From Macrostomum lignano (lineage: Eukaryota), in NCBI GenBank assembly GCA_002269645.1, contig NIVC01001997.1, forward strand, positions 1 to 64,000: a stretch of 64,000 bases of DNA, given 5' to 3'. The notes beneath the pieces are model-generated. The model had not been told where the DNA came from. It made no database searches and was given only the letters and a program-made list of their open reading frames with translations. Of the stretch, positions 1-51,368 are shown in pieces (within the stretch, counting starts at the first letter, position 1; each line of letters starts with the position of its first letter). The position numbers were made by a program, and so were the translations under genes.

Positions 1-1416
1 CTTATTATCAAAGTGCTAGGTTTTTCTATCTGAAAAAAGCACTTGTCAAAGCTATTGCTAGTTTTTCAACCAAAAAGATACCTTAGATGTGGATCTCTGA
101 GTTAAAGAAAGCTAGAGTGAATCATAGTGTATTCAGTGAGATTTGTAGTTTTCTTAGCCAGCTATAACATGCAACTAACAGCAACAATATCAATACTTCT
201 GTTGTGTCTGAGACCACTAAAGTTATTTATGCCCATATCTTGTGCAACATTCTTAATGTTATAAAACACTCAATCTCATGGCAAATTTTCATTCTACTTA
301 ACTACTTGACAAAACTCGACTCAAAAAACTCAGCTTGAGTTTGTCTAGGCTCTACTGTATAGCTAAGCTTATGGAGCCAATTGCTAGACTCAGGGTGTAG
401 CCAAGGGGGTCATGGGGACATGACCTCCCCTCCCAGCCAGCTGATCCAGGCCAAATTTTCAGGCCCCTCCCCCATTGCAAAGGCCTAGCACCCCCTGCCC
501 CTGGTTGCTGCTGTGAGCCTGTGACTAACTGTGACCCCCCCCCCCCCAGAAGGAAATCCAATATGCTAATAAATAGCAAATATGTTAACTTATACAATAC
601 TTCAAATTGTCAATTTTGAAACATTGCTATTAGACTAGTGTTTTCAATTTTAATATTTAATTTTAATTAGATGCAGTTAAAAAATAAAAAGATGTTTATA
701 TATCTAAAGAACAAAAACAAAACTTGTGCATTTTTGTTAAAATTTCAAATTTTTACTTTGTAAAAAACAGGGAAATCAGTTCTGCATTAAATAGTTATCA
801 AATTTTATATTTATATATACATAGAAAAGTATTGTGATTATTACTAATGTAATTGTTTCTTTTTTGGTGCATGGTAAACACCAAAATATTTTATACTCTG
901 GATCATGTTGGATGCATGCTAGAATATACACCAGGGAGTTTTTTGTTTGTACACTTATTGAATGTCATCCTCACCAATTAAATGCTATATACACCATTGA
1001 CAATAATTAAGAGGCCTACAAAAAAGCAAAAAATATATGCAAACATATGTTTAAAAATGCACAAGAAATTTTAGAAAAAATTTATAACTATAGGCATTAG
1101 CATAAAACTATTTTTTAATAATTTTTGGTAACAAAATATTTTTCTCTTTTCTAGTAAAAATAAATAATATAAAGTAAACTTAGTTATTTTCAGAAACTCA
1201 AGACTGTCCTACTATACCCCTATAGGAAAAAGTTGTAAAACTGCGGATGGTGTCCGGCGCAGTTTTGAAATTTTTCTAAAGCGCAGCGCACACACAGGCG
1301 CAGCGTCTGCGCGCGCTGCCCTTTCTTACTGGCTACTGCTCTAGCAAATACATATACATGGAAATGGGTATAATACCTCTGTTGAAGGGGCTTATACACT
1401 TGTAATTTATTAAGCT

Positions 1417-2408: not shown

Positions 2409-2717
2409 CATACATGCGCAACAGTCAGCCGAGTCGGCCAAACCGGCCGACTGATTTGGCAGCCAACCAAGGAAGTTGCAAAAATGCCCATCCAAAAAGT
2501 AGTACTTACTACTTAGTAGTAGTAGTACTAAGTAGCTGATGAAGCATTTTGGCCTTATAAGACAGTCATAGTTACTCCTGTCATTTACCCAAAATTGCCT
2601 TAATTTTGCTTTAGGGTTTTTTTACATGTAAGTTGCATTTTTGGCCAAAAACTATGTAGCATTTTTGTTAAAACTAAGTTGCATGGCTGACCAAATTTCG
2701 GAGGTTGCGCATGTATG
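2409..2717. mobile_element. 309-bp hAT-superfamily MITE, copy 1
   Basis: Perfect 14-bp TIR CATACATGCGCAAC (2409-2422) / GTTGCGCATGTATG (2704-2717). Perfect 8-bp TSD TACTCTAT (2401-2408, 2718-2725), the size typical of hAT. Internal AAGTTGCA repeats. Confidence 0.9.
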
Positions 2718-3907
2718 TACTCTATTCTATAGCTAAAGACAAGTTAAAGTAAATTACATAAACATAATTAAAAGGAAATTATAATTCTTGCAAAAACAAG
2801 GAAACCATAGTCCCAATTATGCTAGGTATATGCCTGAACAAATATTGAATAATTACAAATGCATGCCAAAAAAACTTTTTGCATGCCCATTCCTAATACT
2901 ACATTGGCAACAATAAATGACATTTTTTGAATTGCATTAAAGAACCTGTATGACAGATAATTTGATTGACTTTCATAGTTTTTCATTGATACTATTTATG
3001 GTAGAAAATTGATACATGCAGATTTGTTTAAATGCTTAATTACAAGCTTAAAAAACCAGGAAAGCTTGAAATTTACATTTGGAAAAGGATTTTTATCTTT
3101 TATTCTATTTAATACTAACTTTTCTATATGATTCTATAAAGTGCACACCAAGTGTTCATACACACTATTTTCTTAGGAGTGATACATGCCAACTATGCAT
3201 ATCTACTTTTGGCATGCAGGGCTAATGCATGCCCAATTTTTTGGGCATATACTATATATAAAATCTACAACTAAATAATCAAATGATAGATAAAACAAAG
3301 TCAATCTAAAGGAAAAGCTTATATGCATTATAGAATAGTATTGTATCAAAAGAATTATCCAAATTATATACTAGTTTTCTACCATAAGGGGAGGTCTATA
3401 TGCTATAGCTAGCTATAAACAAAACTATAGCTTATTCTAATTATTTGTATTCTATAGCCATAGGGACCCCAATATTACTATATTCCCTTCATTTGCATAG
3501 CCATAGTTTTAACAAGTTTAAAAAAACATTAAATTAGAAAGATAGCCTAATAACAACTGCAAATAAAAGTAGAAAATAAAATAAACATATGATTGCCTTT
3601 TAAGATTATATTTTATCCTTTTTATAAAGTAATTTATAGAGTACTCTTTTTTATAGAGTAACAATACTTAATCACTACTGAAAGTACTAATGCTAAACTT
3701 TTTAATATTTATAAAAGCTAGAGTTTGCTAATGTTTTATTGTACATTATTAGGTATAATCTATATATAAGTTTTCAAGTCTATAATATAGTCTACCAAAG
3801 TATCTAGTTGTTTTATTCTACTTGTCTTGAATATTTTTATTGTTTTAAATTAATAATCTATAGCTATGGAAATCTATGGAATTTAAAACAACTACCATAT
3901 TTTTAGT

Positions 3908-4221
3908 CATACATGCCCAACTTCAAAATTTCACCCATCTGGTGCAACTCAGTTTTGTCCAGATTTGCAACTTATTTCCTCTCAATTGCAACTTAGTTCC
4001 CTAATTGCGACTTAATTTTCACTTTGTATATGACTTTTCTTGCTTTTTTCTTTTTTTCTCTTTCTTTCTTCTCTTTTCTTTTTCTCTCTTTCTTACTTTT
4101 TTCCTTTTCTTTTTTCTCTAATTTTTTTGTTTTTTGCTTTTTTGATTTTGCAACTTACCTTGGCTGGCGGCTATTTCACCCATCTGTTTCAGATGGGTTG
4201 GATGGATGTTGGGCATATATG
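3908..4221. mobile_element. 314-bp hAT-superfamily MITE, sister of 2409-2717, opposite orientation
   Basis: TIR CATACATGCCCAAC (3908-3921) / GTTGGGCATATATG (4208-4221), 1 mismatch. Internal TGCAACTT/TGCGACTT repeats. Aligns end-to-end with the reverse complement of copy 1. TSD degenerate (TTTTTAGT vs TCCATAGT). Confidence 0.8.
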
Positions 4222-6439
4222 TCCATAGTCATAGCCATAAAAGCAGCTATCTACTGTAACCATATTTGTAGTTGCTAAAGGCACCTATTTTACCATATTT
4301 GCTATAAGATCTTATAGCCATAGCTATAGCTACGGTAGAATACCATACACAAATATTTTCCCTTATAGTCAAAAAGGTAACATTTGAAAAGGCAACAATC
4401 ATATATTTATTACAATTATAAGTTTATATATATTAGACTTTTAGACTTTAGAACATAAGAATGTGTTCATAATATATTTGATAAAATTTACAAGTAGTTA
4501 AAATTAGACCTAGATTTGTGTAGGCATATTTGGTAACCTTATTAAAATTTACCAGTAGGCCTGGCAATAATATGAATTTGTGATATATTTTATGATTCTT
4601 AGCCAACAATTAAAAAGCTTTATGAATATTGATCAACTAATAAAAAGGCAAAACATATTAAAAGATGAATATTGACTCATTGAGTCTAGACTAAAACAAT
4701 AATAACTTTCTATGTTGATAATGAAAACTCACTGTCTATATTATTATTTTTTTAAAAAAACTGCCTTGTAAAATATTCTAAGAAATAGGGTTTCCCATCC
4801 TTTGATACCTAAGTAGTCTTTGGTATATTACTTACATATAAAATGCCAACACAACTCTAAGTCTAAAATCTACATTTTCAACAAAATTCATTCTAACAAA
4901 TATACATCTTGACATGCAAGTAAAAAAAATGTAGATTTGTAACTGTTGACTGTCACTCTTTGGACTATTGCCCTTTTGACTAATGTCCTTCTAACTATAA
5001 TATTGCCTTTTTGATTTGTTCTCATTGAGGCCTAAAGCCTATAATAGTACAGCTAAGCAAGATTTCATTTATATTAATGGGTGCTTTACTGCTTTGCTAA
5101 GAATGCTGAATGCTGACACACTTACCAGCCTTTGTTTAAGAATAATATTGTTGTGATGAGCTGAGTTTAACAAAACAAGAGTGCATTTTTATCATCTTTT
5201 GGCCCAAGGCATCTTTGACTATAACTTAGAGTCTACAACTCTACGCCTAGACTAGTCATAGAGTTGTAAAAAAACCAAAAATACTAAACAAGTCTAGCCT
5301 CTAGCTAGTTAGGCCTAAATATTAAATAAGTTATTAAACAATGAATACGTTAAAAACCATTAGGGCCTAAAACATTCAAAATCATGATAGATAGGGCTTG
5401 GATGCCTAGTAGACATTTTTACGAAATAGAATAAAGTAGACTAGAGATAACAAATTCAAAACTTACATTTTTTACTGTCTAGGTTACTAGGCCTGCCTAG
5501 GCTCTAGGCTTATCTTTGACAAGCCAGTCAATCAGATTAGGCAAGACAAGAGAGCATGCATTCAATGAACTAAAGAAAGACGAATTTTAGAATTAGAAAA
5601 GTATATTTGGACTACTAAATTGAAAACAAGAAGGAGTGGTAATAATATATTATCGTTTAAAACAAATTTTAATTTTTTACTGACCGAACTGTGCAGGATT
5701 AAATTGGCCCGCGTTGAGCATATTCTCGACCTATGATTTTAAAACGACTTTCAAAGTAATCAAACAATTTTAAAGACTAAAAGATAAACAAATTTTTAAC
5801 TGCATGCTTTCACACGTTAGTAAATAGCAATTAATTTTAATTGAAGTTATCTAAATAAAAAATTTAAATTATTTGATGCTTCATTGTTAAAATTGGTCAA
5901 CTTTTTCATTGCTATTTAAAGTAAACACAAAAATAAATATTTCTAAGAAAGAGAAAGTTCTAAAGAATAAAGATAGTTTAGGCCTAAACTACATGAAACT
6001 GCAACTAACAAGTTTTATTTAGCTGAGTTGTCTATTAATTAATAAAAAAGGATTATGCTCATTTATATATCTTGCAGCTGTTTTGATATATTCCTCGTAA
6101 ATTTGGCCTCAAATCTGAAATCATTCACGGACTTATTATTTTGCATTGTCGTCTCGTAACTCGTCTTTCATAATAATTATATCAGTGTATGTAGGCCTAG
6201 TACATAGATAATTTAGGGTCGGTGAAAATTCCTTTCGAAGAAACACTTTGTCAAATTTTAATCAATATTTTTCTTCTGATTTCAGTATTTAATTTTCATC
6301 TGTAATATTCCACTGATAGTGATGTGATCGGCCTAGGCTTATCTTATTTAGGTCAAATTAAAGAAAAACTTGACATAAATGCCATTCCCCATGTTTAGTG
6401 GTGCAGTCAGAAATTTATTTCGAGGGGACCCATTGGTGC

Positions 6440-7206
6440 GCGGTCATTTTGTCTGCCACTTTTTCATCTGCTGGCAGACAAAACAACTTTTTAAAATAAG
6501 CAGCAAAATAAGTTTTATAAATGGCTGAAATTAATTTATAGAGTATTTTTAATAGTTAGAATTTAATAGTAATTTTCAGATTTAGAATTAAATGTAGTTT
6601 TTGTATTTTTTATTTTGCTTATTGCAATGTTTCCAAGAAATACAATTTTTCATTTATAAGCTTTAATTGAATCTACATAGTGAGCTGTGAATGGATTTAT
6701 AATTTGTGCACGTATAATGGGATTTATAATTCTTACTGCCATTATACACTTTTACCATTTTCCGCCATTGTGCATTTAGTGACAGGTATTCTTTTATACA
6801 GTAATATGTACATTTTTACTGCCACTATACACTTTGTGTATTTGAATACACTGAATTTTCGGTATTGTCCAATACAAAGTAAACAAATCCTAATAAATAA
6901 AATAATTCTAACTTGACTAATTGCTTTTGAGCTTTGAAGCTTTGAGACAGTTAAGAGATAGTATGGCATGCCATATCATGACGAAAATGCATTGAATTTG
7001 TTCAATTGCATAGTTTATTAAATATAAACAAAAATATTTAGAAATTACTTGTATAGGCCGTAAGTCATCGCTACTAAGAAATGATCCCAATATCTTAATC
7101 ACTGTTATCTCAAATATCTCAAATCTCAAATTAATGACAACAACTTATTGAAAACTTATTAACACTTATTAAAACTTTATTATTCATTAGCAGACAAAAT
7201 GACTGT
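6440..7206. mobile_element. Putative non-autonomous TIR element (~770 bp)
   Basis: GCGGTCATTTTGTCTGCCA (6440-6458) is the inverted counterpart of TAGCAGACAAAATGACTGT (7188-7206), with 3 transitions. Extra GCAGACAAAA motifs lie near both ends. Superfamily not assignable. Confidence 0.5.
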
Positions 7207-7914
7207 ATTGTATTCTTGCAGACAAAAGGGTAGCAGACGAAACAACCATCAACTAACCCATTCAGCATCCTAAGCAGGGGGTATAGGGAGGAAGGATTTT
7301 TTCTAGAATTCTAGGGGGAGAGGCAAATTTCTGTTTGAACTTTTGGGGGGCTAGGTTAAATATTTAATATGGTAGATATTTTCATTTAAATTTGCACTTT
7401 TTTCTGCTAGGCCTACAACTACAATGCAGCATAATTCAATGGCCAAGTATCCATTTGCATAAACAACAAAATTTGCAGAATACTCAGTAAGTATCCAATT
7501 CCAATGCAGTAGGCCTACCCAATTATGTTCATTTGATATAGCTTAGAATTTTCAAAGAATGTATTGCTCTGGGGTAAAATCTGCTATTGGTATGCATCTC
7601 ATGGTAAATTGGTCCCCTTCTTGCACTAGAACATATATATATATATCAGATTGTGTTTTGGGCTTTGATAAGGTGCATTGATAAGGCATACATAGGGCAA
7701 AGCATTGTCTTTGAAAGAAGTCTTCCCCTTTGAAAAAAAGCCAATCTACTTGTCTAAATTAATAAAATGCCATGCCATGGAATAGACCAGATCTTTGACA
7801 TGCTCTATTGGCAATAATTCAACAAATATGCCTATACATGTCAATTTTGTACTCCTTAGCAAGCTTCAAGCAGGCCATGGCAATTGTTTGCTTCAAGAGT
7901 GGAAAAAATGATAC

Positions 7915-8145
7915 TGCACTTGATAAACCAAGGATTATTGCACTTGATAAACCAAGGATTATTGCACTTGATAAACCAAGGATTATTGCACTTGATAAAC
8001 CAAGGATTATTGCACTAGATAAACCAAAGAATATTGCACTTGATAAACCAAGGATTATTGCACTAGATAAACCAAAGAATATTGCACTTGATAAACCAAG
8101 GAATATTTCACTTGATAAGCCAAGGATTATTGCACTAGATTAGAA
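7915..8145. repeat. 24-bp tandem array GCACTTGATAAACCAAGGATTATT
   Basis: About 9 near-perfect units, degenerating to ~8330. Source of the ALDKPRII ORF. Confidence 0.9.
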
Positions 8146-8339
8146 AGGGCTATTGCATTAGCTAAGACATCTTGATATTTGGACTTGATGAGGAAAGGAT
8201 TATTGTACTAGATAAGAAAATGATTATTTCACTAGCTGAAAAGTTGATTATTGTGCTAGCTATGACATGGATTGTTGCATAACCTAAAAAAGCAATTTTG
8301 CATTTGTGGAGGTAACATTTGCACTAGCTACTTGCTATT

Positions 8340-8860
8340 GGAAGGATGCTTGCTCTCAAGGGCATGCTTGCTCCCTGGATAGAAAGAATCCCTGGATTCT
8401 TTCTATCCAGGGATACTTGCTATTTAGGGATTCTTGCTATCTGGGGGATGCTTGCTATCTGCTAGATGCTTGCTGTTTGGGTGGATGCTTCTATCTGGGG
8501 ATGCTTGCTATCTGCAGGATGCTTGCTATCTTGGTGGATGCTTCTATCTGGGGGATGCTTGCTATCTGCTAGATGCTTGCTGTTTGGGTGGATGCTTCTA
8601 TCTGGGGGATGCTTGCTATCTGCAGGATGCTTGCTATCTTGGTGGATGCTTCTATCTGGGGGATGCTTGCTATCTGCAGGATGCTTGCTATCTAGGTGGA
8701 TGCTTCTATCTAGGGGATGCTTGCTATCTGCAGGATGCTTGCTATCTGGGTAGATGCTTGCTATCTAGGATGATGCTTACTATCTAGGTGGATGCTTGCT
8801 ATCTGCAGTTGCTTACTTTTGGAGGGGGGTGCTTTCTATCTGGGGGGATGCTTGCTGTCT
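8340..8860. repeat. ~20-21-bp tandem array, core GGATGCTTGCTATCT
   Basis: Repeated core with a ~62-bp higher-order pattern. No CpG. Confidence 0.9.
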
Positions 8861-9526
8861 TGGGAATATTTTCTATTTAGGAAGAATGTCTGTTATCTTT
8901 GTAGAAGCTATATTTTGTTGTGTTTGTTAATTAAAAAAAGAGATTCATAGCAAACATCTTTGTCTTTTTTTCCAACCTTGATACCATTGAATTCAAGTAT
9001 TATGTAGCTTATATTTTTATTTTAAATGTTGTATATACAAGATTTAATTTTATAGATAATGGGACTCTGAAGTGATACATTTTGGCAATAAAAGTTACTA
9101 CCTAGTTTGAATTTATTTCCCAACCAATCAATGTGCTCCAACAAGCAAAAGCTAAGGACATGATGTGAAAGTAGTTGTGTATTATCTAAATCATTTCCAA
9201 TGCTGAAGACTAGAATATAAATAGAAATAGAAACCAATGTTGAATTCAAGCAAGAAGCTTTCCCTCAAGGCAACACCTTGAGATTTTCAACATTCAATAG
9301 TCCATAAGTTACCATCACATGATTTTATCATCAGGAAAATATAGTAAAAATCTGCCTTCTCTGTTATTACAGAGCATAGTAGTGAGAGTCCCATAAGACT
9401 GTAAACGTCCTGTGGCTACTGTTTCTAAATTTAAATTCATACAGAATCAAGACATCTGCCTGAAATAGCATTAAAATACTATTAAAACATTTGCATGAGC
9501 TTATTTAAAGGCCTAGATCTCACACA

Positions 9527-9997
9527 ATGGCCAGCACTCTTGACACCCTGCTCAATAAGCAGCTGACTGGCGATGCCGGCACAACCAATGGTGACGCCAA
9601 TCTGTCACCTCAGGAGCGCAGCATTTTGCAGCTGTACGCAGCTACAGAAGAGAAACGAGCCGTCTGCTTGCGTCAGCACGCCCAGCAGAGCGAGAAAATC
9701 ACCGATAGTGTTGTTGATTGCAAAGTGACGCTACAGTTAATTGCTAGGCGTAGAGGCGAATTGGATCGATTGAGAAGCCTACTGAACAGTAGTAGCGATA
9801 GGGACATTGGCGTGCAGCTTCGTCTATTGGACAATCGCTCTGAATGCTTGGATCGAAACGAAGACTTAACGCTGCGTCAGCTTGAGGAGCTGCGCAAACA
9901 GGCTCGGATGTTGGATGAGCAGAGACTAAACATACTGCACATGGAGGAGGTCAGGGACAGTATAATTGGAAAGTTTGTCAGCCACGGTTCCGACTGA
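9527..9997 (+). CDS. Orphan 156-aa predicted coiled-coil protein (single coding exon)
   Basis: ATG-to-TGA ORF, non-repetitive, with gene-like GC/CpG content against an AT-rich flank. Heptad-like Leu/Arg/Glu pattern. Family not recognised. Confidence 0.65.
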   Translation: MASTLDTLLNKQLTGDAGTTNGDANLSPQERSILQLYAATEEKRAVCLRQHAQQSEKITDSVVDCKVTLQLIARRRGELDRLRSLLNSSSDRDIGVQLRLLDNRSECLDRNEDLTLRQLEELRKQARMLDEQRLNILHMEEVRDSIIGKFVSHGSD

Positions 9998-11975: not shown

Positions 11976-12018
11976 TTCCTTCCTTCCTCTTGACATTTAA
12001 ATCCGCAAATTTGTTTAA

Positions 12019-38600: not shown

Positions 38601-38817
38601 TGCACTTGCTGACTGTGACCCATCGCAGAAGTACGACGCTGAACATCAGGGCTGCACTGTTGGACATATTCGTGACTTCCATGCCGATGTGAACCCATTT
38701 GATGCAGAGGGTGAAGGGGAAGTCGTGCTCATTGCTGCCACTGCCATTACGGCTCATTGCGCTGTCACTCGTCGGCAGCTGGCTATTCTGCCCTGTATTC
38801 AGTCTGCATCATCGTAA
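35666..38817 (+). pseudogene. EnSpm-type DDE transposase interrupted by a -1 frameshift at ~36902-36910
   Basis: Frame 1 (35666-) reaches CSEC..CQSC..IDFMVFD. The -1 frame continues QLRAVLQS... through SMDAF, MDAPQRA, FNGMHGCDNC, LHALYLG, YNSHQVFHH, FGPL and YE motifs typical of animal EnSpm transposases. Confidence 0.85.
35885..36405 (+). repeat. In-frame 24-bp array encoding (LEPEREHG)n inside the transposase N-terminus
   Basis: About 21 units of TTAGAGCCAGAGCGTGAGCATGG(T/G). No stops in the transposase frame. Confidence 0.95.
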
Positions 38818-39628
38818 AAGTATGCCAATCTGTGCCCGCTGGCTTTTCACCTCTATTGTGAAAAGAGATGAAATGGCCTACCACTCTCCATCTTAACCCA
38901 TCCAACAAAACGTAGCTGGCGGATGACGTTAATGGTTGCTTGGCGACGGTGGTTAAGGACAGATCATGGCCTTCGAGACCACGGGTGTGATAGCTTATTG
39001 AAAAACTATTTGAGCGAACTTTCTTGACAACCAATTTGGACAGATGCACAGACCCTACGGCTTTACTTCCAAACCCCTGTCATCGCGGTTCCCCCCGGGC
39101 CCCGCTCCCAAATCCCAGACGCCCCCCCAAGTCACCCGAAGCTCTACTTTTCAACCGAGTCTATTCCCCTGATAGCTCATCGCTACAGTACCTGGTTGCC
39201 GCAGCACACGCCACCCGCACGCGTTTGAGGTCGCCAGCACCATAGACCGTCGCCAGCTATGCAACACATTTCATTTATTTGCTCTATTCAGTTGTTTACT
39301 CATCTGTGTTAACTGCTTTGCTCACCCTTTGCTTATCGATTCGATTATTATTTATTTTCTTTTATTTCCTTGCATGCTAAAATAAAATCGTGCGTGTGCT
39401 AACCATGTGCAACTTTCAACCAAATTCTACGTTTGTTCATCCTTTATAAAGCACAATGTAGCTAGCTATATTAATGCGACAGCTGCAGGCGAAAATATGA
39501 AACTGAGGCTGGGGAAGTGTAGTCAATTATAGGAACTTTCGGGCAAATTAGTCGATATTTGGGCAGAGAAATCAATTACCCAGCTCAATCAATTATTCTC
39601 GGGATTTCCTTATTGCAGAAAGTGTACA

Positions 39629-41106
39629 ATGGAAAGCGCATTTGTTATCCAGCTGACACAAGGGTCGAAAGAAATTATGGCTGCCGCGATATCCTGCATA
39701 ATCGTAGAGTCAACTGCAGCCACGAAAGTCTGCTATGGAACGAAAGCCTCCGTACAGCTTGGAGACAAACTGCACCAGTGCATGGTGCTTACCGAGGCGC
39801 TTCCGACAACTGAGTTGGCAAGCTCCGTGGCCAGCACTATAAGCAAGGTGAGAAGCTTCTGTTAAATGATGTTGACATTACAATGCATGTATTCATATAT
39901 GGATATTATAATTGCATTATATAATTATAATATGCAATGCTCCTACGTTCATATAATCAGGTTTGCAGAACGAGCAGCAATGCCGGCCAGCCTACAAGAC
40001 AGGTGCCTCTGCCACAACAGTGCAGGAGGTGCCAAGTGTTGGACGCGGAGGTGAAGCAGCTACGGACCGAACTCGACGAGTGCCACAGAGAGATGCGCAG
40101 GGAGCTCAGCGTGCTCGAAGAAATAAGCAGGCACAATCTCCTGGGCAAGGTCGATGACATCTGGAACGCTGTCAGATCAGGCTCGTCAGCTCAGGCTACA
40201 ATATCAGGTGCCATTGACCTGCAACGTAGCCCATTGGACGGCAACAGAAACGACGCCGTGAACGAGGCTGTATGCACCACCGAGGCCAACACCATTGCTT
40301 TAAGCGACCATCTCCCGGCGATCAGAATTCAGTGCAGTCTACTGACCGCGGCAACTGCAAAAGTCGTCGGGATGCCGGTTGCTAAGGCGTTAGACGCATT
40401 GACGCGATCGCTTTTAGATGCTCTTGTCCCAGTAGAAGAGCGCCAGACTAAGTCATTGCTTCCTGTTTGTAAAGTTAAGTGTCAAACGATATATTCAACA
40501 AAAAAGTTTACGAGCGTACATGCACATTTTTTATTTCACACTGCAATTCCTACAACCATCCTTGCCAAAATTATCATCCCACCTTTCCCTAGAAACCAAA
40601 CAAAGAAATGCATTTCATAAACTTAAAATCAACCTTCAGGTGGAAACCCCGGCAGGAGTCCGCGCCTCGAGGATGTCATCGCTGACAGGGCATACGACCC
40701 TAGAGCTACGGCGATTGCTGCATTCGTTATCAAGCAGCTGGATGGGGTCACCCTGGCCGACGGATTCAGGGCGGTGAGAAAAGTTCTCCGATACGATCGC
40801 AAGGCGAGAAGTCGAACGATACGGCTGCAGGCAGTTTCTGCTATACCTACATCCTCAGCTTCTGCTGCAGCTGCATCCTCAGCTTCTGCTGCAGCTGCAT
40901 CGTCAGCTTCTGCTGCAGCTGCATCGTCAGCTTCTGCTGCAGCATCCTCGATGGCCCAGGCCAACTACTGCGAGTCGACAAAGCCCAAACATCCTCGACT
41001 GCTGCATACACAAATGGGCAACATTTCCCCAACGCCAACAAACGACAGCTTCACGACGTGCTTCAGCCAAGTCGATGGAGAACTTATCAATATGATAGAA
41101 TTGTGA
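39629..41106 (+). CDS. Transposon accessory protein (~397 aa, 3 exons), coiled coil plus BEN-like domain
   Basis: Exons 39629-39847, 39961-40468, 40640-41106. GT-AG introns with consistent phases (1194 nt). The segment LTRSLLDALVP..SLLPVCG..SPRLED..AIAAFVIKQ..VRKVLRYDRK resembles the BEN fold pattern (recognised from memory, not searched). Confidence 0.7.
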
Positions 41107-42584
41107 GACAATTGATTTTTTACTAACAACTTTTTGCCTCTTATCGTTAAGTTATCACGAATTTAGTGCTGTTTGCAGCCACGCACTAATTGCTTTTTTG
41201 TTTTGTTTTTTTCTGTTTTTTCTTTTGTTCTTCATTTTTGCTTCTTTACATATACATAACTGCTGTTCACATGGTGACCGCGGTCAGTGAAAGTCTGTGA
41301 AAGTAAAAAGCAATAGAAAAAATGGGGAAGCCAGATAAACTGAGAGCACAATCAGGGATTTTTTCTTGCGTTTCACACATTTTGTGAATGTTGCGTTTAC
41401 TGCCATTCTCATACATGTAGAGTTATATTGCAATAGTTACGTCAATGTTTATTGAATTTTAAAAATCCTCTTCACAAGTGGCCACTGTTTCTAGAGTCAC
41501 CCTCCACAAGGTTTTCAGCTGATTAAGCAAAGCGCGTATCCATTGTGAAAGTATACTAGCTGTAGATCCAGAAAATTTTTTCACATTGTCTTGAAATTAC
41601 AAGTTCGCATGTATCTCCTCTTTGCAATCAATGTATGCTCGTGTATACTTTTTGAAAAGGTTTTAAGATGTGCGTAATTTACATGCGCACCACAAAAATA
41701 TAAAACGATTGCTTTTGCCGTTACATAACAAAAAATTACGCAAAATTATGAAAATGCTACTGCTATTTTATTAACAGTGATCTTGCATTGCATTGTTTGT
41801 CTTTTTAGACGGAAGGAGACGTTAATTATCTCTAATTTATAGCGCCTGCCTATGTACATGATGCAAATTATAAACTGAGCACGTAATCAAGTCGTGTTTG
41901 TGTACACATACAAGGGAAAATCATTTAGTTTGGAAAAAAATCTATGCAACTAAATTTATAGTAGTACAAATTTCATACTTGCTACTGACGTTCAGTAGTT
42001 TGAATAGTATGCTGAACTGCTTTCTGTGCGCGTGCAAAATTCTGGGTCACTTTATGCCACGTCGGCGCCGCGTTGCCAAGTTGGTGCCAAGTTCTTAACG
42101 GCTTCCGATTGGTTTGTCGTCGTGGCGCTAACCTGGCGCAGACTGAGCCGCTCAACCCGGCGCATCCACCAACATTTTTCCCAGCGGGCAGTTGAACAAC
42201 TAGGCCTATTAATAACTATCAAGCGGGCAAGCGATTTTTTAGAATCAGTCAGATTTCAGATAAGAAATTTTAAACAATTTAGCTAATAGGTAATGAATTA
42301 GCTAGCTTGGGCTTACCTAGCTTAGATTTATAGGCTTAGCTCAGCTGATCTTGATTCTTGGATCTAAGGAAACTTTGTTGATTTTAAGCAGTTATCGAAA
42401 TTGTCGATATAGGGGCCTATGCCTAACGTTATTACATTAATAAGCCCTACTGAGTACTGAAGCTGTTTTTATGATTGGCCTAGGCTTACTGGGGACATAT
42501 GATTGTTAGGCCTGTCATTTTTAATATTGAGTTTTTAACAATAAGATTGGATAAGAAGTAGGCTTAGGCCCTAGAATTTCAAAA

Positions 42585-45500
42585 ATGAATTTGAAGCTTC
42601 ATTTTGTCCTTGTCTACTTATTCATTTCAACTGCAGCTCTTTATACTTGTCTTGCTATTGCTGGTATGTGACTTAACCGTAATTTTTTTCTACTTATTAA
42701 CTTATATTATTATTTTGGATTTTTGTCTAAAATTAATTTTTTATTTAGTAAAAAGGCCTAGGCCTAATCTTAAACTGTTAAAGTTAAAAAGTTCAGTTAG
42801 TTAGGTAGGCCTAGGCCTAGGCCTAACTAGTATCTACTAGGCCCAGGGCCTAGCTTGATTATTTTAATTTATTTGTTGCATTAGGCCTAGGCCTATAAAA
42901 AACTTTACATTATTCATTGTCATTGAAAAAACCTTAAAAATATTTGAGTTGAGCAATTATTGTATAAAACTAGAGTCTAATGGAATAAATTACCTTTTAG
43001 TAGTTCTAGGTTTCACTTAGAGTAGGGCAATGGGTCTATCTAATAAAAGGCTTATGCATTTTTGAATATAGGCCCATTCTAGCATTTAGACCTAGGCTAA
43101 TTTATAGGCTAATCTTTTTTATTAGCTTTAAATTAGGCTGTTTTTTATATAGGCCCTAATAAAAAGTAATTTCACAATGGGCCTTATATACAACAATATA
43201 CAATAAAGAGAGCCAGAGCAAAAATAGCATAAATTTGTTCAAAGGAAAATAAAAAACTAATAGATATTTTTGCAAACAATATAACAATATCAATGCTAAG
43301 CCTATAGTTATCTAAAACTTATTTAAAAAAACTATGCCTACTTTTAATAGGTTTTGCAAATTTTAAATTATCATACAGTTATTTTAAAAAATAGAAAATT
43401 TTTAAAGCAATATTTGAGAATTTTAAGTGCCTTTTTGGAAGTTATAGTCAATATATTGCCTTGGCATTCATTGGCATTGTTCCAATTATTTTTGCTAAGT
43501 ATTTGTAGGCTGTAGCCATATACTATACAATGATCTTTGTTGTAGACATAGGTTTATAACAATTAATATTTACAATGGCTATAATGATAACTTGTATAAA
43601 ACAAGTAAGGCTAATGTACAATAGAAGTTTCTGTTGTGTACCTTTCTTTTCACAGATTGGATTGTATCTAATTCAAATTTGCAATTGGTTATTATTAACA
43701 ATTTCTAGGGTACCTTTTAAAATACTATTACTTGACATAGACCACCATTGCCATTCCTTCAACATTGCAAAAAGTAGAGTCCTAAGACCTTTGCTATAGA
43801 TTGCTCTATACACAACTTCTTGGGGCCTTCTGAACCTTGTGGCAACCACTACTTAGATTGGAACTTACTTAGACTTAGGGTCATATTAAGGTTAGGGTCA
43901 TATTTTATGACCTTAGTTGACCCTAAAACTTAGGGTCATATTTTATTCCCAATCACTAGGTGCTAGTAAATTTTTTCCAAATTGCATCCAAGCAGTTTAG
44001 CAGGTTGATAACATACTCAGTGTATTGAACCTAGTGTTTAGGCCAAAATACTCATAAGATCTAATAGACACTTGCTTGCTTAGACCAAGATTATCTATTA
44101 TGGAGCATTGCAATGAGAGATGCCTACTTTGTCAACAATCTTGTTTATCATTTTCCAATCCTACTCAATTGCCTATAAAATAGCAGCCATGTTTTCCTTT
44201 ATGAACAATGTTATAGATCTGCTAGACTGCTAGGCATTTTCTATAGACTCTTGGCCCTCCCTGAAGGCCTAAATCTAACACTAATGGGCCAATCCAGTAT
44301 AGCAATGTCCCCATAGACCTTCAAAGCCTCACTAATACAGGCTAACTTCTAGCCAAGTTTTACAAGAAACTTCATGTTAGTACTTCAGTTTTTGGATTTT
44401 TCCATTGCTAAAAGTGTATACTATGATTAGAGTATAACCATGGAGATATCAATTACTTTCAAAGAACCAAAACTCGATCAAATAAAAAAATAAAACTGTT
44501 TTTAATGAAACTAGTTGCAGTTCAATATGTTTTATAGTTTAGGCATTATAACAAAGATTATTACTTTTTGAATGACCTTTGTATATTAGTATATCATAGT
44601 TTCATGGAAAACTATCATATTGGCTAGGTAAAATTCAGGTTACAAATATATATATCAAAGCTATATATAGTCAAGCTATTGTTTATTTCTTATTGATTAA
44701 TATGTTTAAAGTAAGAAAAAAACAATAACTTGCATGTCTAAGATAGTTATATTTCCCTCTAAGCTTTTTATATCTCAACTACTATATCCTTATGAGCTAT
44801 GGTATCTTAACAACTCTCCTATTGACTTAAGATAAACCAATAGCTTTGTACAGACACTTAAGCCTTCTTGCCTTCTGTAATAACCTTCCATAACTTTAAT
44901 AAAGAAGATGGAATGATTTAAAGAAGTTTATATTACATAATTTAATTTTTAGACTCATTACCTACTTAAAAGTAGTAGAATAAAATGTTCCAACTAATAG
45001 TAACTGCAATCAATTAAATTGAGTTATAATGAACAGATGCCTTATCTAGCTACTATACAATGTATTTGTGCTTTAACAAAGGTAACACATCAGTCAAGCT
45101 GGTCTGGAATCGTCTTGTCAAAGTGAGCCTGGATTCTGATGGCCAAGTTTTGACCATAGACAGTCCATTGGGTGTGCCCAGCGACACAGCCTTCCTATTG
45201 CTGCAGGGCCACCAACTACCAACCTTATCCTACAATGCTAATCAACTGTTGCAATTGTCAACTCTGTTGGAGTTTAATCGGTCTGACTCTGTTACTAAGG
45301 GGTATCATATTGGCTTGGTTACTATGGAAACTAGCCTGCCACGTTGGTACGCTAGACTGGTTAATGATGAACAGCTAAATAACAGTGGTAGTACAAAACC
45401 AAGCTATGCTTGGTTACTGATTGTTGCAAAGGCCTGGGACGAACCGTTGCCAGGCGGTTGCTGTACAAATCGATCGCTGCCTTGGTCGGCCTGCAACTCA

Positions 45501-48500
45501 ATTGGGCCAGCTGTTAATCTGTCCCGTCCCGCGGCTTCTTGCCCAATTTGGCAGCTTGACTTTCACCCGGCAGCTGGTCTGAAAACTAACAAGCCAAATT
45601 TAAGACTTTGTCACTCGAAGTCTAAAACTTTGGATAGCAGCGGCCATCGGTTGAAGCGTTTTAAACTGCGCTACCGATTGTACGTAGCCGAAGTGACACA
45701 CGGCGATTGGCCAGCCGCTTTGCGACTAATGTCCACAGCTCAGGATGCTGTAGCCTATGGCCACTTGATTGGAGTTATTAGCAATTCAGCATCTGTTAAT
45801 AGCGACAATTGCTGCCGGTTCACTGTTGGCTCCAGAGATAATATTAACCTAATAGCGACTGTGGTTGCTGAGCGAGTGGACACGTCCCAGTTCAGTGCAT
45901 ATGCACCCGTGCTCATAACGATTAATGAAAATAATGAAGGGTTTGCCGGTTCCGCCTGTCTCTGTTTTGGTAATTGCGATTTATTAAACTCTGTGAAATT
46001 ATCTTGATAGTTCTTTTAACACTCGTAAGCGTACTGATGGAAGTCGAAAGTCACTCCTGTGTGTATCGTTAAAAATTACACTTTAAATTATAGAAATACA
46101 ATCCTCACTGAACCATTAGGAAACACCTCATAAAACAGCTGTGAGAATCGCCCTAAGCCAGCTTTGAGAGTCGTCCCTAAGCCAGCTTGAGATAGGTCCT
46201 TAACTTTGGATACAACGTGCCATCCATAATTAAACCTTTAAACCTTCAACAGATTTCGAGTGTCGAACTGTCTCAATTTTGGCTGCTCTCGTTGGCCTAT
46301 TTCTTTGCACCACTGGCTTTAGATTTTTTGCGGCTAGTAAGTAAAGCTTATTCGTCATTAAATGTAGTCTTTGTAGTGTAGTATTTAAGTAATACTTGGA
46401 TTTTCTTACTATCAGATAGATCAGGATTCGGGATAAGAATCCTCAGATTGGGGATCAGGATTCGGGATAAGAATCCTCAGATTGGGGATCAGGATTCGGG
46501 ATAAGAATCCTCAGATTGGGGATCAGGATTCGAGATAACAGTTTTCAGATTGGGGATCAGGATTCGGGATAACAGTTCTCAGATTAAGGATCAGGATTCG
46601 GGATAAGAATCCTCAGATTGGGGATCAGGATTCGAGATAACAGTTCTCAGATTGGGGATCAGGATTCGGGATAACAGTTCTCAGATTAAGGATCAGGATT
46701 CGGGATAAGAATCCTCAGATTGGGGATCAGGATTCGGGATAAGAATCCTCAGATTGGGGATCAGGATTCGAGATAAAAAATCCTCAGATTGGGGATCAGG
46801 ATTCAGGATAACAGTCCTTAAATTGGGGATCAGGATTCAGTTAGAAGATTCTGAAGCACAATATCCCACCTCCATTGCACCAGGCGTATTCCTATGCGGT
46901 TTCATCAATGGCTCGCTGGTCTTTCTGCCCGTAACACTGAGGCAGACAGCCGCCCAGCTGTCCATGGTTGCCAGCCTGCTGCTAGGATGCCTAGCCCCTG
47001 GTCTAATATTCGGCGGCATAGCCTTGGTTATTTGGCTTCGAAAACGTTGGAATTGGATGGCCTATTTGATTTTGCACCTGCCTTGTTGCTACGCGTTAGC
47101 TAGCCTGCTTTTTGCCACTCCGTTTGGCCAGCTGTGGTGGCTCACTGGCCACGAGGCCGCTTTTCTTGGGGCTCTTGGCGCTGCTGTGCTTCTCTGCCTG
47201 CTGCTTCTGCTGCTGTTTAGTAGCTCGGTGAGTCTTGAGGGATCTGGGAGGCTGGCCCAGCAACTGAGGATCCGAGAGGCTGGCCCGGCAACTGAGGATC
47301 TGGGAGGCTGGGCCAGCAACTGAAGGTCTGGGAGGCTGGCCCAGCAACTGAGGATCTGAGAGGCTGACCCAGCAGCTGACACTCTGGGAGGCTCGCCCAG
47401 CAACAGGGGATCTGGAAGGCTGGCCCAGCAACTGACAATCTGGGAGGCTGGCCCAGCAACTGAGGATCTGGGAGGCTGGCCTAGCAACTGAGAATCTGGG
47501 AGGCTCGCCCAGCAACTGAGGATCTGGGAGGCTGGTAGCCCAGCAACTAAGGATCTGGGATGCTGGCCCAGCAATGGAGGATCTGGGACTGGGAGGCTGG
47601 CCCAGCAACTGAGGATCTGGGAGGCTGGCCCAGCAACTGAGGATATGGGAGGCTGCCCCAGCAGCTGACAATCTGGGAGGCTGGCCCAGCAACTGAGGAT
47701 ATGGGAGGCTGGCCCAGCGACTGAGGATCTGGGAGGATGGCCCAGCAACTGGGGAGCTGAAAGGCTGGCCCAGAAACTAAAGAACTGGCCCTGGCTTTGT
47801 CTATGGCCAAAACTGAGGGATCCGAATTCGCACTCAATTTGCCAACAGAAATTAAGCTAGAACAGGACCTCGCCTTTGCCTGAGTCTCTCTTACATCCTT
47901 GAACCGTTTCAGGGCGCCATTTTCTCCCTGTCATTTGTTGGCGCATTCATGCTGACGGCCGTCCTAACAGCCAATCTTCCCGTGTCGTCGATTTTTCCCT
48001 ACTTGTTCCTGGATTTGTTCCGCCGGACGGCTACGGAAAACTACAACGGGGCGCTGCTGTATTACGAGTTTCGCAGAGTGGCTGGTTAGTTAAAATAGCT
48101 GTTTCTTAAACTGCTTAAGCTTATACGGATGGGAGATTTTTGGGATGCTCCGCCTTTATGATTCTTGATCTATCTCCCCACCTAGGATTCCTACCTTTCG
48201 GGATTCCCACCTTTTGGGACTCCCACCTCTTCGGATTCCCCACCGAAGAGTAATTCCCCGGATTCCCCACCTCTTCGGATTCCCCACCTCTTCGAATTCC
48301 CCACCTTTCCGGATTACCCACCTCTTCGGATTCCCCACCTCTTCGGATTCCCCACCTCTTCGAATTCTCCGCCTTTCCGGATTCCGATCTCTTACAATTC
48401 CCTACCTTTTGTGATTCCTACCTATTTCCTATTTCCTACCTATTCGGATTCTCTACCTATTTGACTTTCCAACCTCTTCGGATCCCCGCCATTTGGATTC

Positions 48501-49023
48501 CCCTTCTTTTAAGATTCCTCACCTCCTCGGGTACCCCAGCCCTAGAATTATTCCTCTGTCAATCATGATAAAAGAGAAATTTAGACATTAGTTAAATGTT
48601 GAATTTCTAGAATCCCATATTTAGTTAACAGAATCTCTGGTGTTAGGATAAGGGAGACAGTAAAGCTTAGTTGTTAATTCGTGCTACTAAAGTAGCTAAA
48701 TAATGAATCGTGAGTAAAAAATATCCGCAGACCTGGCAGCTCTAATTGGTTGGCCAATTGTCACCGCAGTCTGCTGTCTACTACAGTATCGCTGCAATCG
48801 TAAGCTAGGCCTGGACCCCGGTAGTAGAGGCAATATCGAACCAGGATTCGAACCGACTCTGCCGTTGCCGCCTCCACCGCCAACCTCATCATTGGCTGCT
48901 GCTGCTGGTGCTGGTGACGGTGATGAGCGGCGTACCCGACAGAGGCTGTTAAATGTGTCTTTTATCGGCGATGGTGTCTTCAGGGACGGTGCTGGCGACA
49001 GAGCACCCCTAATCAGACAGTAG
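42585..49023 (+). CDS. TM7SF3: Transmembrane 7 superfamily member 3, ~619 aa, 6 exons
   Basis: Exons 42585-42663 (signal peptide MNLKLHFVLVYLFISTAALYTCLAIA), 45082-45969, 46253-46336, 46884-47227, 47913-48084, 48731-49023. Phases are consistent (1860 nt). Motifs EPLPGGC, LRYRLY, SAYAP, GLFLC.GFRF, FATPFG, and C-terminal GDRAPLI matching vertebrate GERTPLL. Confidence 0.88.
46420..46840. repeat. 34-bp array in TM7SF3 intron 3
   Basis: About 12 units of GATTGGGGATCAGGATTCGGGATAAGAATCCTCA. Confidence 0.95.
47237..47770. repeat. ~28-bp array in TM7SF3 intron 4 (reverse complement of the 10.2-10.6 kb family)
   Basis: GGAGGCTGGCCCAGCAACTGAGGATCTG units starting ~10 nt after the donor. Confidence 0.95.
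48170..48540. repeat. 17-18-bp degenerate array CCCCACCTCTTCGGATT in TM7SF3 intron 5
   Basis: Repeated GGATTCCC core. Confidence 0.85.
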
Positions 49024-49371
49024 TACCTGTATATTCAATATGACTGCTTTGTCTATCTAATAGAGTTTTTTAAGATCTCATATTTTTCTTATGCATATTT
49101 TATTTTGTTTATTGGTATTTATTAAAAACGTTTTTATGCAGACTTATTTTGTGTTATTCTTCTGCTTTCTAAAATATTCTCTATTTTTTTCCTCCAAGTT
49201 AAAAGTTTTGTTTTGAAATTTTATTTTATTTTTAAATCGGTCACTTAAGTTTGTATTGTTAAAATGCAACGAAATATAAGATTATATATATTCTATTGCT
49301 AAAAAGAAAATCTTGATTCCTTTTCTTGTGCTCTTTCACTGTACAAACATTTTTGTTGCGTTGGGTCTTTA

Positions 49372-51315: not shown

Positions 51316-51368
51316 GGCTTATCATCAAGTAGCTTCATGCCCCGAATTGTTTTCTGTCGTTCCACCAG

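What the first reader, a model, noticed from the sequence alone, without database searches (positions are those of the whole stretch)
42300..45400. A ~3-kb near-total CpG desert covering the 5' end of TM7SF3, with sharp recovery inside exon 2
Seen: between 42430 and 45110 I found only 2 CG dinucleotides by eye (42678, 44475), where several tens are expected from base composition. TAG, CTA and TAGGCCTA are abundant. The stretch includes exon 1 and intron 1. CpG returns gradually within exon 2 (about 5 in 45082-45400 versus about 22 in 45430-45800), and later exons are CpG-rich. Established: germline 5mC deaminates CpG to TpG/CpA, and some invertebrates methylate gene bodies with a 5' bias. Inference: this is the mutational scar of a methylation or deamination domain of fixed length starting at the TSS and ignoring exon/intron boundaries. 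Such an extreme, sharply bounded footprint in an otherwise CpG-rich genome would be unusual.
Basis: partly seen in the sequence, partly recalled or inferred. Interest (0 to 1): 0.7.

Follow-up and report, generated by a model that had tools for sequence, protein, structure and literature searches.

The report
CpG-free first intron in a flatworm gene
In the flatworm Macrostomum lignano, about 2.8 kb at the start of a TM7SF3-like gene has lost nearly all its CpG sites where it sits, most likely because that stretch was methylated in the germline; several neighbouring genes show the same thing between their promoter and first main coding exon.

Summary
There are 2 CpGs in 42430-45110 where about 55 are expected, then 5 in 45082-45400 and 22 in 45430-45800.

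The window is Macrostomum lignano contig NIVC01001997.1, bases 1-64000. The desert (42445-45264 by HMM) covers a putative signal-peptide exon 1, the 2.4-kb intron 1 and the start of exon 2 of a TM7S3/TM198-domain gene.

It is not a tandem repeat or a recognisable transposon, and no other copy turned up.

The loss happened in place. In the first 348 nt of exon 2, 2 of 41 synonymous CpG opportunities are used, against 57 of 197 in the rest of the gene.

The desert is one of a class. Three more non-repetitive deserts lie in the window and two in a related contig. Each lies next to the first acceptor or main coding exon of a gene. For three, CpG-normal DNA that may be the promoter lies on the other side.

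Two deserts are CpG-free in both diverged copies of the locus, while equally old neighbouring DNA keeps its CpGs.

Lengths run from 0.9 to 2.9 kb, so "fixed length" fails. Germline 5mC is the best explanation, because the species keeps DNMT1 and DNMT3, but methylation itself was not tested.

The parts
42029..42232 (.). CpG-dense, GC-rich patch (19 CpGs in about 200 bp; ATTGG/CCAAT box near 42107). Candidate unmethylated promoter of the TM7SF3-like gene.
   Evidence: CpG list and sequence. The promoter role is inferred.
42445..45264 (.). The CpG desert under study: 2820 bp, GC 32%, 4 CpGs against 69.9 expected, no tandem-repeat content.
   Evidence: HMM segmentation; CpG positions; no repeats, ORFs or ncRNAs.
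42586..42665 (+). Putative exon 1. It encodes MNLKLHFVLVYLFISTAALYTCLAIAG, which reads as a signal peptide, and ends G|GTATGT in phase 1. It contains no CpG.
   Evidence: Sequence. The phase fits both candidate acceptors of exon 2. Absent from all three UniProt models, which start at K=45096, and from the NCBI annotation. Inferred, not shown.
42666..45081 (+). Intron 1: 2.4 kb, GC about 30%, 2 CpGs (42678, 44475). The alternative acceptor AG at 45092-45093 is also in frame.
42754..42900 (.). Cluster of TAGGCCTA / (TAGGCC)n palindromic words at the start of intron 1.
45082..45431 (+). First approx. 350 nt of exon 2: 5 CpGs against 17.5 expected, 0/25 NCG codons, 2/16 C|G codon junctions. Three of the 5 remaining CpGs are Arg CGN codons.
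45432..45902 (+). Rest of exon 2, CpG-normal (27 CpGs, o/e 0.89).
46886..49020 (+). Exons 3-5 of the TM7S3/TM198-domain gene (46886-47227, 47913-48083, 48700-49020). CpG o/e is 0.58-1.22. The introns between them are filled with minisatellites.
   Evidence: tblastn of P0001; Pfam PF13886 E=2.7e-10.
2460..5315 (-). Second non-repetitive desert (2856 bp, 6 CpGs against 60 expected). It is intron 1 of a minus-strand 1594-aa DEAD/Helicase_C/TUDOR gene.
   Evidence: HMM; gene call in L001/L002 mapped to the window; CpG-free in the diverged copy too.
5466..5468 (-). Annotated CDS start of the DEAD/Tudor helicase gene. The minus strand reads aaaaAT|GTAAGT, so the start codon is split by intron 1. A TAGGCC-rich stretch lies 14-43 nt upstream.
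5316..7085 (.). CpG-normal AT-rich spacer (rho CG 0.66) between the helicase gene and ORF 9527. Used as the age-matched control; 13 of 19 CpGs are shared with the diverged copy.
7086..9553 (+). Third desert (2468 bp, 2 CpGs against 82 expected; 35% is CpG-free minisatellite). It ends at the acceptor-like tttaaag|G 17 nt before the ATG of ORF 9527-9997.
1..1220 (-). Fourth desert (1 CpG against 31 expected), cut by the contig end. It lies deeper in the same helicase intron, separated from 2460-5315 by CpG-bearing DNA at 1221-2459.

Best explanation
The desert is a long-standing domain in which CpG mutates unusually fast, in the Macrostomum lignano germline. It begins at or just after the promoter of a TM7SF3-like gene. 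It covers the small first exon and the whole AT-rich first intron, and it fades out within the first 180-350 nt of exon 2. The most likely cause is dense cytosine methylation of this interval by the DNMT1/DNMT3 system the species retains, followed by 5mC deamination. Over a long time that has removed about 96% of the CpGs.

The same state marks the interval between a CpG-normal region (possibly the promoter) and the first splice acceptor in several other genes. The unit therefore looks like 'first intron or outron' and not a fixed distance.

Shown:
- The depletion and its boundaries.
- That it arose in place and is specific to CpG.
- That two sister deserts are conserved between diverged copies of the locus while adjacent DNA of equal age keeps its CpGs.
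- That those deserts carry a transition-biased substitution spectrum.

Inferred: methylation as the agent, the TSS positions, exon 1, and that the pattern holds across the genome.
For: 1. Organism and gene. Exon 2 is 99% identical to M. lignano A0A1I8G7X1. The window equals NIVC01001997.1:1-64000. The protein carries the TM7S3_TM198 domain.

2. Decay in place. Synonymous CpG use in the first 348 nt of exon 2 is 2/41 against 57/197 elsewhere in the CDS (p=0.0006). GC3 is 0.46 against 0.48. Three of the 5 surviving CpGs are Arg CGN codons.

3. No inserted repeat detected. No tandem structure, no other copy in about 107 kb of M. lignano DNA (window plus three further loci), no ORF, no Rfam or tRNA match.

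4. Region-specific, not a matter of age. Against the diverged copy L002, the desert-homologous blocks are CpG-free in both copies: 4 and 6 CpGs in about 2.3 kb, 1 shared. The adjacent control block has the same divergence (10.7% against 10.8%) and keeps 13 of 19 CpGs.

5. Different mutation spectrum. Transitions:transversions are 162:88 in deserts and 53:69 in the control (p=1.3e-4). C/T differences run CpA 11.7% > CpT 6.3% > CpC 3.6% in deserts and are flat in the control. To my knowledge, that is the order of DNMT3's non-CpG preference.

6. CpG-bearing minisatellites outside deserts show no excess transitions at CpG, so the fast CpG mutation is local.

7. Architecture. Deserts lie next to the first acceptor or main coding exon in 5 genes.

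8. The literature says M. lignano keeps DNMT1 and DNMT3 and has low overall 5mC (PMC11292947, PMC9246332, PMC10658182). Low overall 5mC is what one would see if the methylated domains had already lost their CpGs.
Against: - No methylation data were available, and the 2015 bisulfite paper could not be read.
- TpG/CpA, the direct product of CpG deamination, is not enriched in the desert's composition (rho CA 1.0-1.27 against 1.0-1.2 in controls).
- An o/e of 0.03 is lower than I know of for other invertebrate methylated gene bodies or for vertebrate bulk DNA.
- Evidence that new CpGs are still being purged is weak: 7 observed against about 13 expected, P=0.054.
- Young transposon insertions inside the L002 desert still carry CpGs at o/e 0.6-0.7. 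This fits slow decay, but it also fits a process that has stopped.
- Downstream exons and introns of the same gene are not depleted, unlike ordinary gene-body methylation.
- No second copy of the TM7SF3 locus itself could be fetched, so the cross-copy tests rest on the sister deserts.
- The TSSs are not mapped. For three of the five genes the desert could be untranscribed upstream DNA.
Confidence: 0.55

Rival explanations
1. Relic footprint. The interval was methylated, or otherwise lost CpG fast, in the past. The process has since stopped, and the deserts persist only because CpG regenerates slowly in AT-rich DNA.
For: Young MITE/foldback insertions inside or next to deserts keep CpG o/e 0.6-1.4. 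The deficit of CpG-creating transitions between copies is only marginal (7 against about 13, P=0.054). Reported 5mC levels in the adult are low (PMC10658182).
Against: Deserts remain at o/e 0.03-0.06 in both copies after about 11% divergence. None of the few residual CpGs inside the aligned desert blocks is shared, apart from one at the edge. The transition-biased spectrum accumulated after the copies split, so something still differs in these intervals.
Confidence: 0.15
2. The desert is old transposon- or repeat-derived DNA that arrived CpG-poor, or was silenced by methylation as a repeat, with silencing spilling about 350 bp into exon 2. The link to gene 5' ends is incidental.
For: [quoted passage not shown] Intron 1 has no function assigned. 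The deserts are AT-rich and share a dinucleotide signature. Methylation is known to spread from silenced repeats in other organisms (my own knowledge).
Against: No terminal repeats, coding remnants or second copies in about 107 kb. The deserts share no sequence with each other. The demonstrable transposons seen here (MITEs, a foldback, a mariner) all carry CpGs at o/e 0.6-1.4. All five non-repetitive deserts that are complete at both ends adjoin a first acceptor or main coding exon. Exon 1 lies inside the target desert.
Confidence: 0.15
3. A non-methylation process depletes CpG. Candidates are transcription- or R-loop-associated cytosine deamination over the 5' transcribed interval, a RIP-like or deaminase-based process, or selection against CpG in first introns and outrons.
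For: The deserts occupy the promoter-proximal interval that is presumably transcribed. Transitions are elevated in all non-CpG contexts, with CpA-to-TpA changes the commonest class. TpA o/e in the target is high at 1.05.
Against: TG and CA counts are equal on the two strands (157/157 in the target). Base skews are near zero. RIP indices do not differ from controls. An almost complete loss confined to CpG is the hallmark of 5mC, not of deamination of single-stranded DNA. To my knowledge, no RIP machinery has been described in animals.
Confidence: 0.1
4. Chance or compositional artefact: AT-rich DNA simply has few CpGs.
For: GC is only 30%, so absolute CpG counts are low everywhere in AT-rich DNA.
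Against: AT-rich controls of the same GC in the same window have rho CG of 0.66-1.2. P(<=2 | 45) = 3e-17. GpC is not depleted (rho 1.6).
Confidence: 0.01

Closest known systems
Mosaic invertebrate DNA methylation with CpG-depleted (low CpG o/e) gene bodies, including the 5'-biased gene-body methylation of insects
   Same: CpG o/e is bimodal within one genome. Depletion starts just downstream of an undepleted promoter and ignores the exon/intron boundary. DNMT1 and DNMT3 are present in the species (from the literature).
   Different: Depletion is near-total (o/e 0.03). From memory, other invertebrates show roughly 0.3-0.6. It covers only exon 1, intron 1 and the first few hundred nt of exon 2, while the rest of the gene body is CpG-normal. 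Most genes in the window lack a non-repetitive desert of this kind. Methylation itself is unverified.
Vertebrate CpG-island / CpG-poor bulk-DNA architecture
   Same: A short CpG-dense patch at the presumed promoter (42029-42232) sits next to strongly CpG-depleted DNA.
   Different: Here the genome's default state is CpG-normal and the depleted state is the exception (0.9-2.9-kb blocks). That is the inverse of the vertebrate pattern.
Repeat-induced point mutation (RIP) and RIP-like hypermutation in fungi
   Same: AT-rich blocks with sharp edges, a transition-biased spectrum, and frequent CpA-to-TpA changes between copies.
   Different: RIP indices in the deserts match the controls. The target is single-copy in the data at hand. 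Coding exons a few hundred bp away are untouched. To my knowledge, no animal RIP machinery is known.
CpG-free minisatellite arrays, abundant in this genome
   Same: They produce equally long CpG-free stretches in the same window (for example 49367-51312 and 11048-11994), often directly upstream of coding exons.
   Different: The target has no tandem structure even at TRF score 30. An array's lack of CpG follows from a CpG-free repeat unit and needs no special mutational explanation, although array 49391-51319 also lacks CpG-creating variants.

Membership tests
Germline 5mC footprint (mosaic methylation) | The genome encodes a maintenance and a de novo cytosine methyltransferase (DNMT1, DNMT3) | not tested
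   Taken from the literature only: PMC11292947 and PMC9246332 state that M. lignano keeps DNMT1 and DNMT3, citing Wasik 2015, which is not held.
Germline 5mC footprint (mosaic methylation) | Bimodal CpG o/e among sequences of equal base composition | tested here: met
   Deserts have rho CG 0.00-0.06. AT-rich controls have 0.66-1.22 at the same GC.
Germline 5mC footprint (mosaic methylation) | Depletion arises in place by mutation at CpG, including at synonymous sites of host exons | tested here: met
   2/41 against 57/197 synonymous CpG opportunities used, p=0.0006, with GC3 unchanged. The state is conserved in both diverged copies for the sister deserts.
Germline 5mC footprint (mosaic methylation) | Excess of the deamination products TpG/CpA | tested here: not met
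   rho CA/TG is 1.0-1.27 in deserts and 1.0-1.2 in controls. All unshared CpGs do pair with TG/CA in the other copy. NCA codons are 40% against 24%, not significant.
Germline 5mC footprint (mosaic methylation) | Residual CpGs in the domain are methylated in germ cells | not testable with these tools
   No methylome data are accessible.
Canonical invertebrate gene-body methylation | Depletion extends over exons and introns through most of the transcription unit | tested here: not met
   Exon 2 beyond about 45430 and exons 3-5 have CpG o/e 0.58-1.22. Introns 2 and 4 carry CpG-bearing minisatellites.
   It starts about 200 bp after a CpG/CCAAT patch and 140 bp before the putative ATG. Sister desert 2460-5315 starts about 150 bp from an annotated CDS start. 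No TSS data are available.
   Non-repetitive deserts are 907, 1592, 2468, 2820 and 2856 bp. The distal end lies within 0-350 bp of the first acceptor or main coding exon in each case.
Transposon or dispersed repeat | Additional copies, terminal repeats, target-site duplication or coding remnants | tested here: not met
   None found in the window or in L001-L003. The whole genome could not be searched.
Tandem repeat with a CpG-free unit | Head-to-tail periodicity | tested here: not met
   TRF at score 30 finds only runs of 16-33 nt.
RIP-like hypermutation | TpA/ApT high and (CpA+TpG)/(ApC+GpT) low relative to unaffected DNA | tested here: not met
   The second index is 1.17-1.76 in deserts and 1.08-1.29 in controls.

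The most novel reading that the evidence does not exclude
In Macrostomum lignano, cytosine methylation (or another cytosine-mutating state) may be confined genome-wide to the interval between the TSS and the first splice or trans-splice acceptor, that is, the first intron or outron. It would have erased CpG there almost completely while leaving promoters, downstream exons and most other noncoding DNA untouched. That would be a methylation landscape not described in any animal. It would explain why bulk 5mC in this species is low despite intact DNMT1 and DNMT3. It would also link DNA methylation to 5' RNA processing.
Probability: 0.2. Interest if true: 0.8.

Novelty: new variant of a known kind. 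Interest (0 to 1): 0.6.

Why it matters
[quoted passage not shown] M. lignano is the flatworm model that still has DNMT1 and DNMT3.

If these deserts are methylation scars, they give a sequence-only map of where the germline methylome sits: first introns or outrons, not whole gene bodies or transposons. They would also account for the low bulk 5mC. The prediction can be tested at once with existing bisulfite, PacBio and RAMPAGE data.

The age-matched comparison between copies adds something further. It shows a different mutation spectrum (more transitions; CpA > CpT > CpC) in blocks a few hundred bp away from DNA that mutates normally. That is useful for anyone modelling local mutation rates.

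On the practical side, the TM7SF3-like gene's first exon is missing from the public gene models. Promoter fragments chosen for transgenes in this species could easily include or exclude such a domain.

Tried and rejected
- Tandem-repeat origin of the target: TRF at default and at score 30 found nothing.
- Dispersed repeat or transposon: window self-BLAST, sensitive desert-against-desert BLAST and inverted-repeat search were all negative.
- Coding remnants: ORFs of 35 aa or more and the six-frame translation show nothing protein-like.
- ncRNA or tRNA-derived SINE: Rfam and ARAGORN were negative.
- RIP signature: the indices match controls.
- Strand asymmetry, which transcription-coupled deamination would give: TG equals CA and skews are near zero.
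- 'TAGGCCTA abundance is a by-product of context-dependent C decay': rejected as the sole explanation. AGGCCT is 6-10 times over Markov-1 expectation in CpG-normal AT-rich controls too.
- 'CAG-specific (CWG) deamination explains the TAG excess': CpA-to-TpA differences are raised in all four CAN contexts, not just CAG.
- Fetching a second copy of the TM7SF3 locus failed. P0001, the exon-2 ORF and two neighbouring ORFs are not on record. The only other contig sharing the upstream block (L003) stops matching the window at 41824. The gene is not annotated on its own contig.
- The primary methylome paper (Wasik 2015) is not held.
- Near-identical copies L001 and L003 gave 0 differences in 4.9 kb of desert. 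That reflects recent coalescence of that block and says nothing about mutation rate.
Full report
**Observation**

The CpGs run 42396, 42405, 42427, then only 42678 and 44475, then 45111, 45182, 45279, 45342, 45350, then a dense run from 45440. Base composition predicts about 55 CpGs for 42430-45110. AT-rich control stretches of the same window have a CpG odds ratio of 0.66-1.2. Against that background, P(X<=2 | 45) = 3e-17. A two-state HMM places the desert at 42445-45264, with 4 CpGs against 69.9 expected and no tandem-repeat content. TAG/CTA is 1.6 times expectation in the desert and 0.9 in controls. Seven of the 13 TAGGCCTA octamers in the window lie in 42201-42895.

**What the sequence is**

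The exon-2 ORF is 99% identical to Macrostomum lignano A0A1I8G7X1, which carries a TM7S3/TM198 domain. The window is bases 1-64000 of contig NIVC01001997.1 of assembly GCA_002269645.1.

tblastn places exons at 45096-45902, 46886-47227, 47913-48083 and 48700-49020. All three UniProt paralogue models start at K=45096 without a methionine. The gene is not in the NCBI annotation of this contig.

It ends in G|GTATGT in phase 1, which is in frame with either acceptor (AG at 45080-81 or 45092-93). I accept it as likely but unproven.

The interval 42445-45081 has no tandem structure even at TRF score 30. It has no internal or window-wide repeat, no ORF or protein-like frame and no Rfam or tRNA match.

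**The depletion was made in place**

The first 348 nt of exon 2 hold 5 CpGs against 17.5 expected. Counting only synonymous opportunities (NCG against NCN codons, and C|G against Y|G codon junctions), 2 of 41 are used there and 57 of 197 in the rest of the CDS (Fisher p=0.0006). GC3 is unchanged at 0.46 against 0.48. Three of the 5 survivors are Arg CGN codons, where loss would change the protein. An inserted CpG-poor element cannot explain loss of synonymous CpGs in host coding sequence. A local mutational process specific to CpG can.

**It is one of a class**

The HMM finds 15 CpG-poor segments. Eleven are minisatellite arrays whose unit simply lacks CpG. Four are non-repetitive: 1-1220, 2460-5315, 7086-9553 and the target. 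These four share a dinucleotide signature (rho CG about 0.03, CC/GG 1.2-1.4). Their TpG/CpA is not raised, their RIP indices match controls, and they show no strand asymmetry. They share no sequence with one another.

**Other copies of the locus**

The small ORF 9527-9997 turned out to be on record. That gave access to two other contigs of the same assembly. L001 is nearly identical to the window. L002 is a diverged copy with about 11% noncoding divergence. The assembly is known to contain such redundancy (PMC5730564).

Both loci carry a minus-strand 1594-aa DEAD/Helicase_C/TUDOR gene. Its annotated CDS start maps to window 5466-5468, where the minus strand reads aaaaAT|GTAAGT. Desert 2460-5315 is therefore intron 1 of that gene and starts about 150 bp from its first exon.

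Desert 7086-9553 ends at an acceptor-like tttaaag|G 17 nt before the ATG of ORF 9527.

In a third contig (L003), two further non-repetitive deserts were found. One (2284-3875) ends at the CDS start of a pyruvate carboxylase gene, with tctcttcag about 70 nt upstream of the ATG. The other (19447-20353) overlaps the CDS start of a 304-aa gene, with ttattttag|G 46-60 nt upstream.

So the target and all four other deserts that are complete at both ends adjoin the first acceptor or main coding exon of a gene. In the three window cases, CpG-normal DNA lies on the other side. That DNA may be promoter: 42029-42232 for the target, and 5316-7085 between the helicase gene and ORF 9527. The lengths are 0.9, 1.6, 2.5, 2.8 and 2.9 kb. 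This speaks against a fixed length and for 'first intron or outron' as the unit. The TSSs are not mapped, so this step is an inference.

**Age-matched test between copies**

In blocks of L002 homologous to deserts 2460-5315 and 7086-9553, both copies are CpG-free: 4 and 6 CpGs in about 2.3 kb, and only one is shared. In the adjacent control block (5256-6434), 13 of 19 CpGs are shared. Total divergence is the same, 10.8% against 10.7%.

The spectrum, however, differs. Transitions:transversions are 162:88 in deserts and 53:69 in the control (p=1.3e-4). C/T differences are 11.7% before A, 6.3% before T, 3.6% before C and 3.0% before G in deserts. In the control they are flat at 4-6%.

The desert state is therefore older than the split between the copies. 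It is tied to position and not simply to age, and it comes with a distinct mutational regime. To my knowledge, the order CpG >> CpA > CpT > CpC matches the substrate preference of DNMT3-type enzymes. I mark this link as inference.

Young insertions inside the L002 desert keep CpGs at o/e 0.6-0.7. One of these is a 643-bp element with 89-nt terminal inverted repeats. The other is a 315-bp segment. A 661-bp foldback insertion in L001 has o/e 1.4. Evidence that new CpGs are still being purged is marginal: 7 observed against about 13 expected, P=0.054. CpG-bearing minisatellites outside deserts show no extra transitions at CpG. One CpG-free array (49391-51319) lacks CpG-creating variants, 1/385 against 31/576, although array copies are not independent.

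**Interpretation**

The best reading (confidence about 0.55) is a long-standing germline methylation domain over the 5' transcribed noncoding interval of a subset of genes. M. lignano retains DNMT1 and DNMT3 and has low bulk 5mC (PMC11292947, PMC9246332, PMC10658182). Low bulk 5mC is expected if the methylated DNA has already lost its CpGs.

Several points count against certainty:
- No methylation data were available.
- TpG/CpA is not enriched in the desert.
- The depletion is more extreme than I know of elsewhere.
- Young insertions inside a desert retain CpGs.
- The rest of the gene body is not depleted.

The rivals are a relic of past methylation (0.15), old silenced repeat DNA with spreading (0.15), and a non-methylation deamination process or selection (0.10). 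Chance is excluded.

**Comparison with what is known**

The phenomenon works like the CpG-depletion footprint of mosaic invertebrate methylation. It fails one defining feature of canonical gene-body methylation, which is coverage of most of the transcription unit. It is the inverse of the vertebrate CpG-island picture. I could find no description of methylation patterns in free-living flatworms. A 2022 review says they are unknown. I therefore rate it a new variant of a known kind, of moderate to high interest, and testable at once with public bisulfite, PacBio and RAMPAGE data.

Noticed in passing
window 42201-43160, 5245-5540, 5979, 6192, 7408, 7510, 9509, 27629: The palindromic word AGGCCT / TAGGCCTA is 6-10 times over first-order Markov expectation in all AT-rich noncoding DNA, in deserts and in CpG-normal controls alike. 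A TAGGCC-rich stretch lies 10-45 nt upstream of the ATG of three genes: the TM7SF3-like gene, the DEAD/Tudor helicase, and ORF 9527 (AGGCCTAG at 9509). It could be a promoter or 5'UTR element, or a microsatellite seed such as (TAGGCC)3 at 42806-42825.
   Followed up: partly
window 9500-64000: About 39% of this gene-dense stretch is minisatellite (units of 13-57 nt, arrays up to 2.7 kb) filling introns and intergenic spacers. Deserts 1-1220, 2460-5315 and 42445-45264 contain almost none. The same 28-nt family occurs in opposite orientation at 10205-10606 and at 47240-47778 (intron 3 of the TM7SF3-like gene).
   Followed up: partly
L001 5732-6392; L002 4680-5322 and 4143-4457; L003 14806-16099: Insertion differences between copies of the locus. 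These are a 661-bp element 94% identical to its own reverse complement (foldback) in L001, a 643-bp element with 89-nt terminal inverted repeats in L002, and a 1294-bp element with about 116-nt terminal inverted repeats in L003. All carry CpGs.
   Followed up: partly
window 9527-9997 vs L002 10001-10471: The 156-aa ORF is 471/471 identical at the nucleotide level between the two copies, while its flanks are 89-94% identical. L002 16284-20471 is 99.8% identical to the window. The 'diverged copy' is therefore a mosaic, which suggests gene conversion or recent exchange between copies.
   Followed up: no
window 41824 / L003 16863: L003 (NIVC01004140.1) matches window 34478-41824 at 98-99% and is then completely unrelated. 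Its tail holds a mariner-type transposase ORF at 18377-19492. A break in synteny or in the assembly therefore lies about 200 bp upstream of the CpG-dense patch in front of the TM7SF3-like gene.
   Followed up: partly
window 42586-49020: The TM7SF3-like gene is absent from the NCBI annotation of this contig. All three UniProt models (A0A1I8G7X1, A0A1I8GMF5, A0A1I8G1G4) begin at K=45096 without a start codon, so the small AT-rich first exon 2.4 kb upstream has probably been missed.
   Followed up: partly
window 1244-1314, 2417-2448: Very short CpG-dense patches directly adjoin the edges of deserts 1-1220 and 2460-5315: 10 CpGs in 70 bp, and 5 CpGs in 32 bp with an inverted repeat AGTCGGCC...GGCCGACT. 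The region 1244-1781 also has a perfect 17-nt inverted repeat (1416-1432 / 1714-1730) and a 22-nt direct repeat 491 bp apart. It may be a small mobile element or a regulatory island.
   Followed up: no
window 49391-51319: A 64-copy 29-nt minisatellite lies between the TM7SF3-like gene and a glutaredoxin-domain exon. It has 1 CpG, and CpG-creating transitions are almost absent (1/385) although other T>C and A>G variants are common (31/576). CpG avoidance may therefore extend to some arrays. The copies are not independent, so the p-value is optimistic.
   Followed up: partly
window 1-5468 (minus strand): The neighbouring gene with a CpG-free first intron encodes a DEAD/Helicase_C/TUDOR protein of 1594 aa. 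To my knowledge, this is the architecture of TDRD9/Spindle-E, a germline piRNA-pathway helicase.
   Followed up: no
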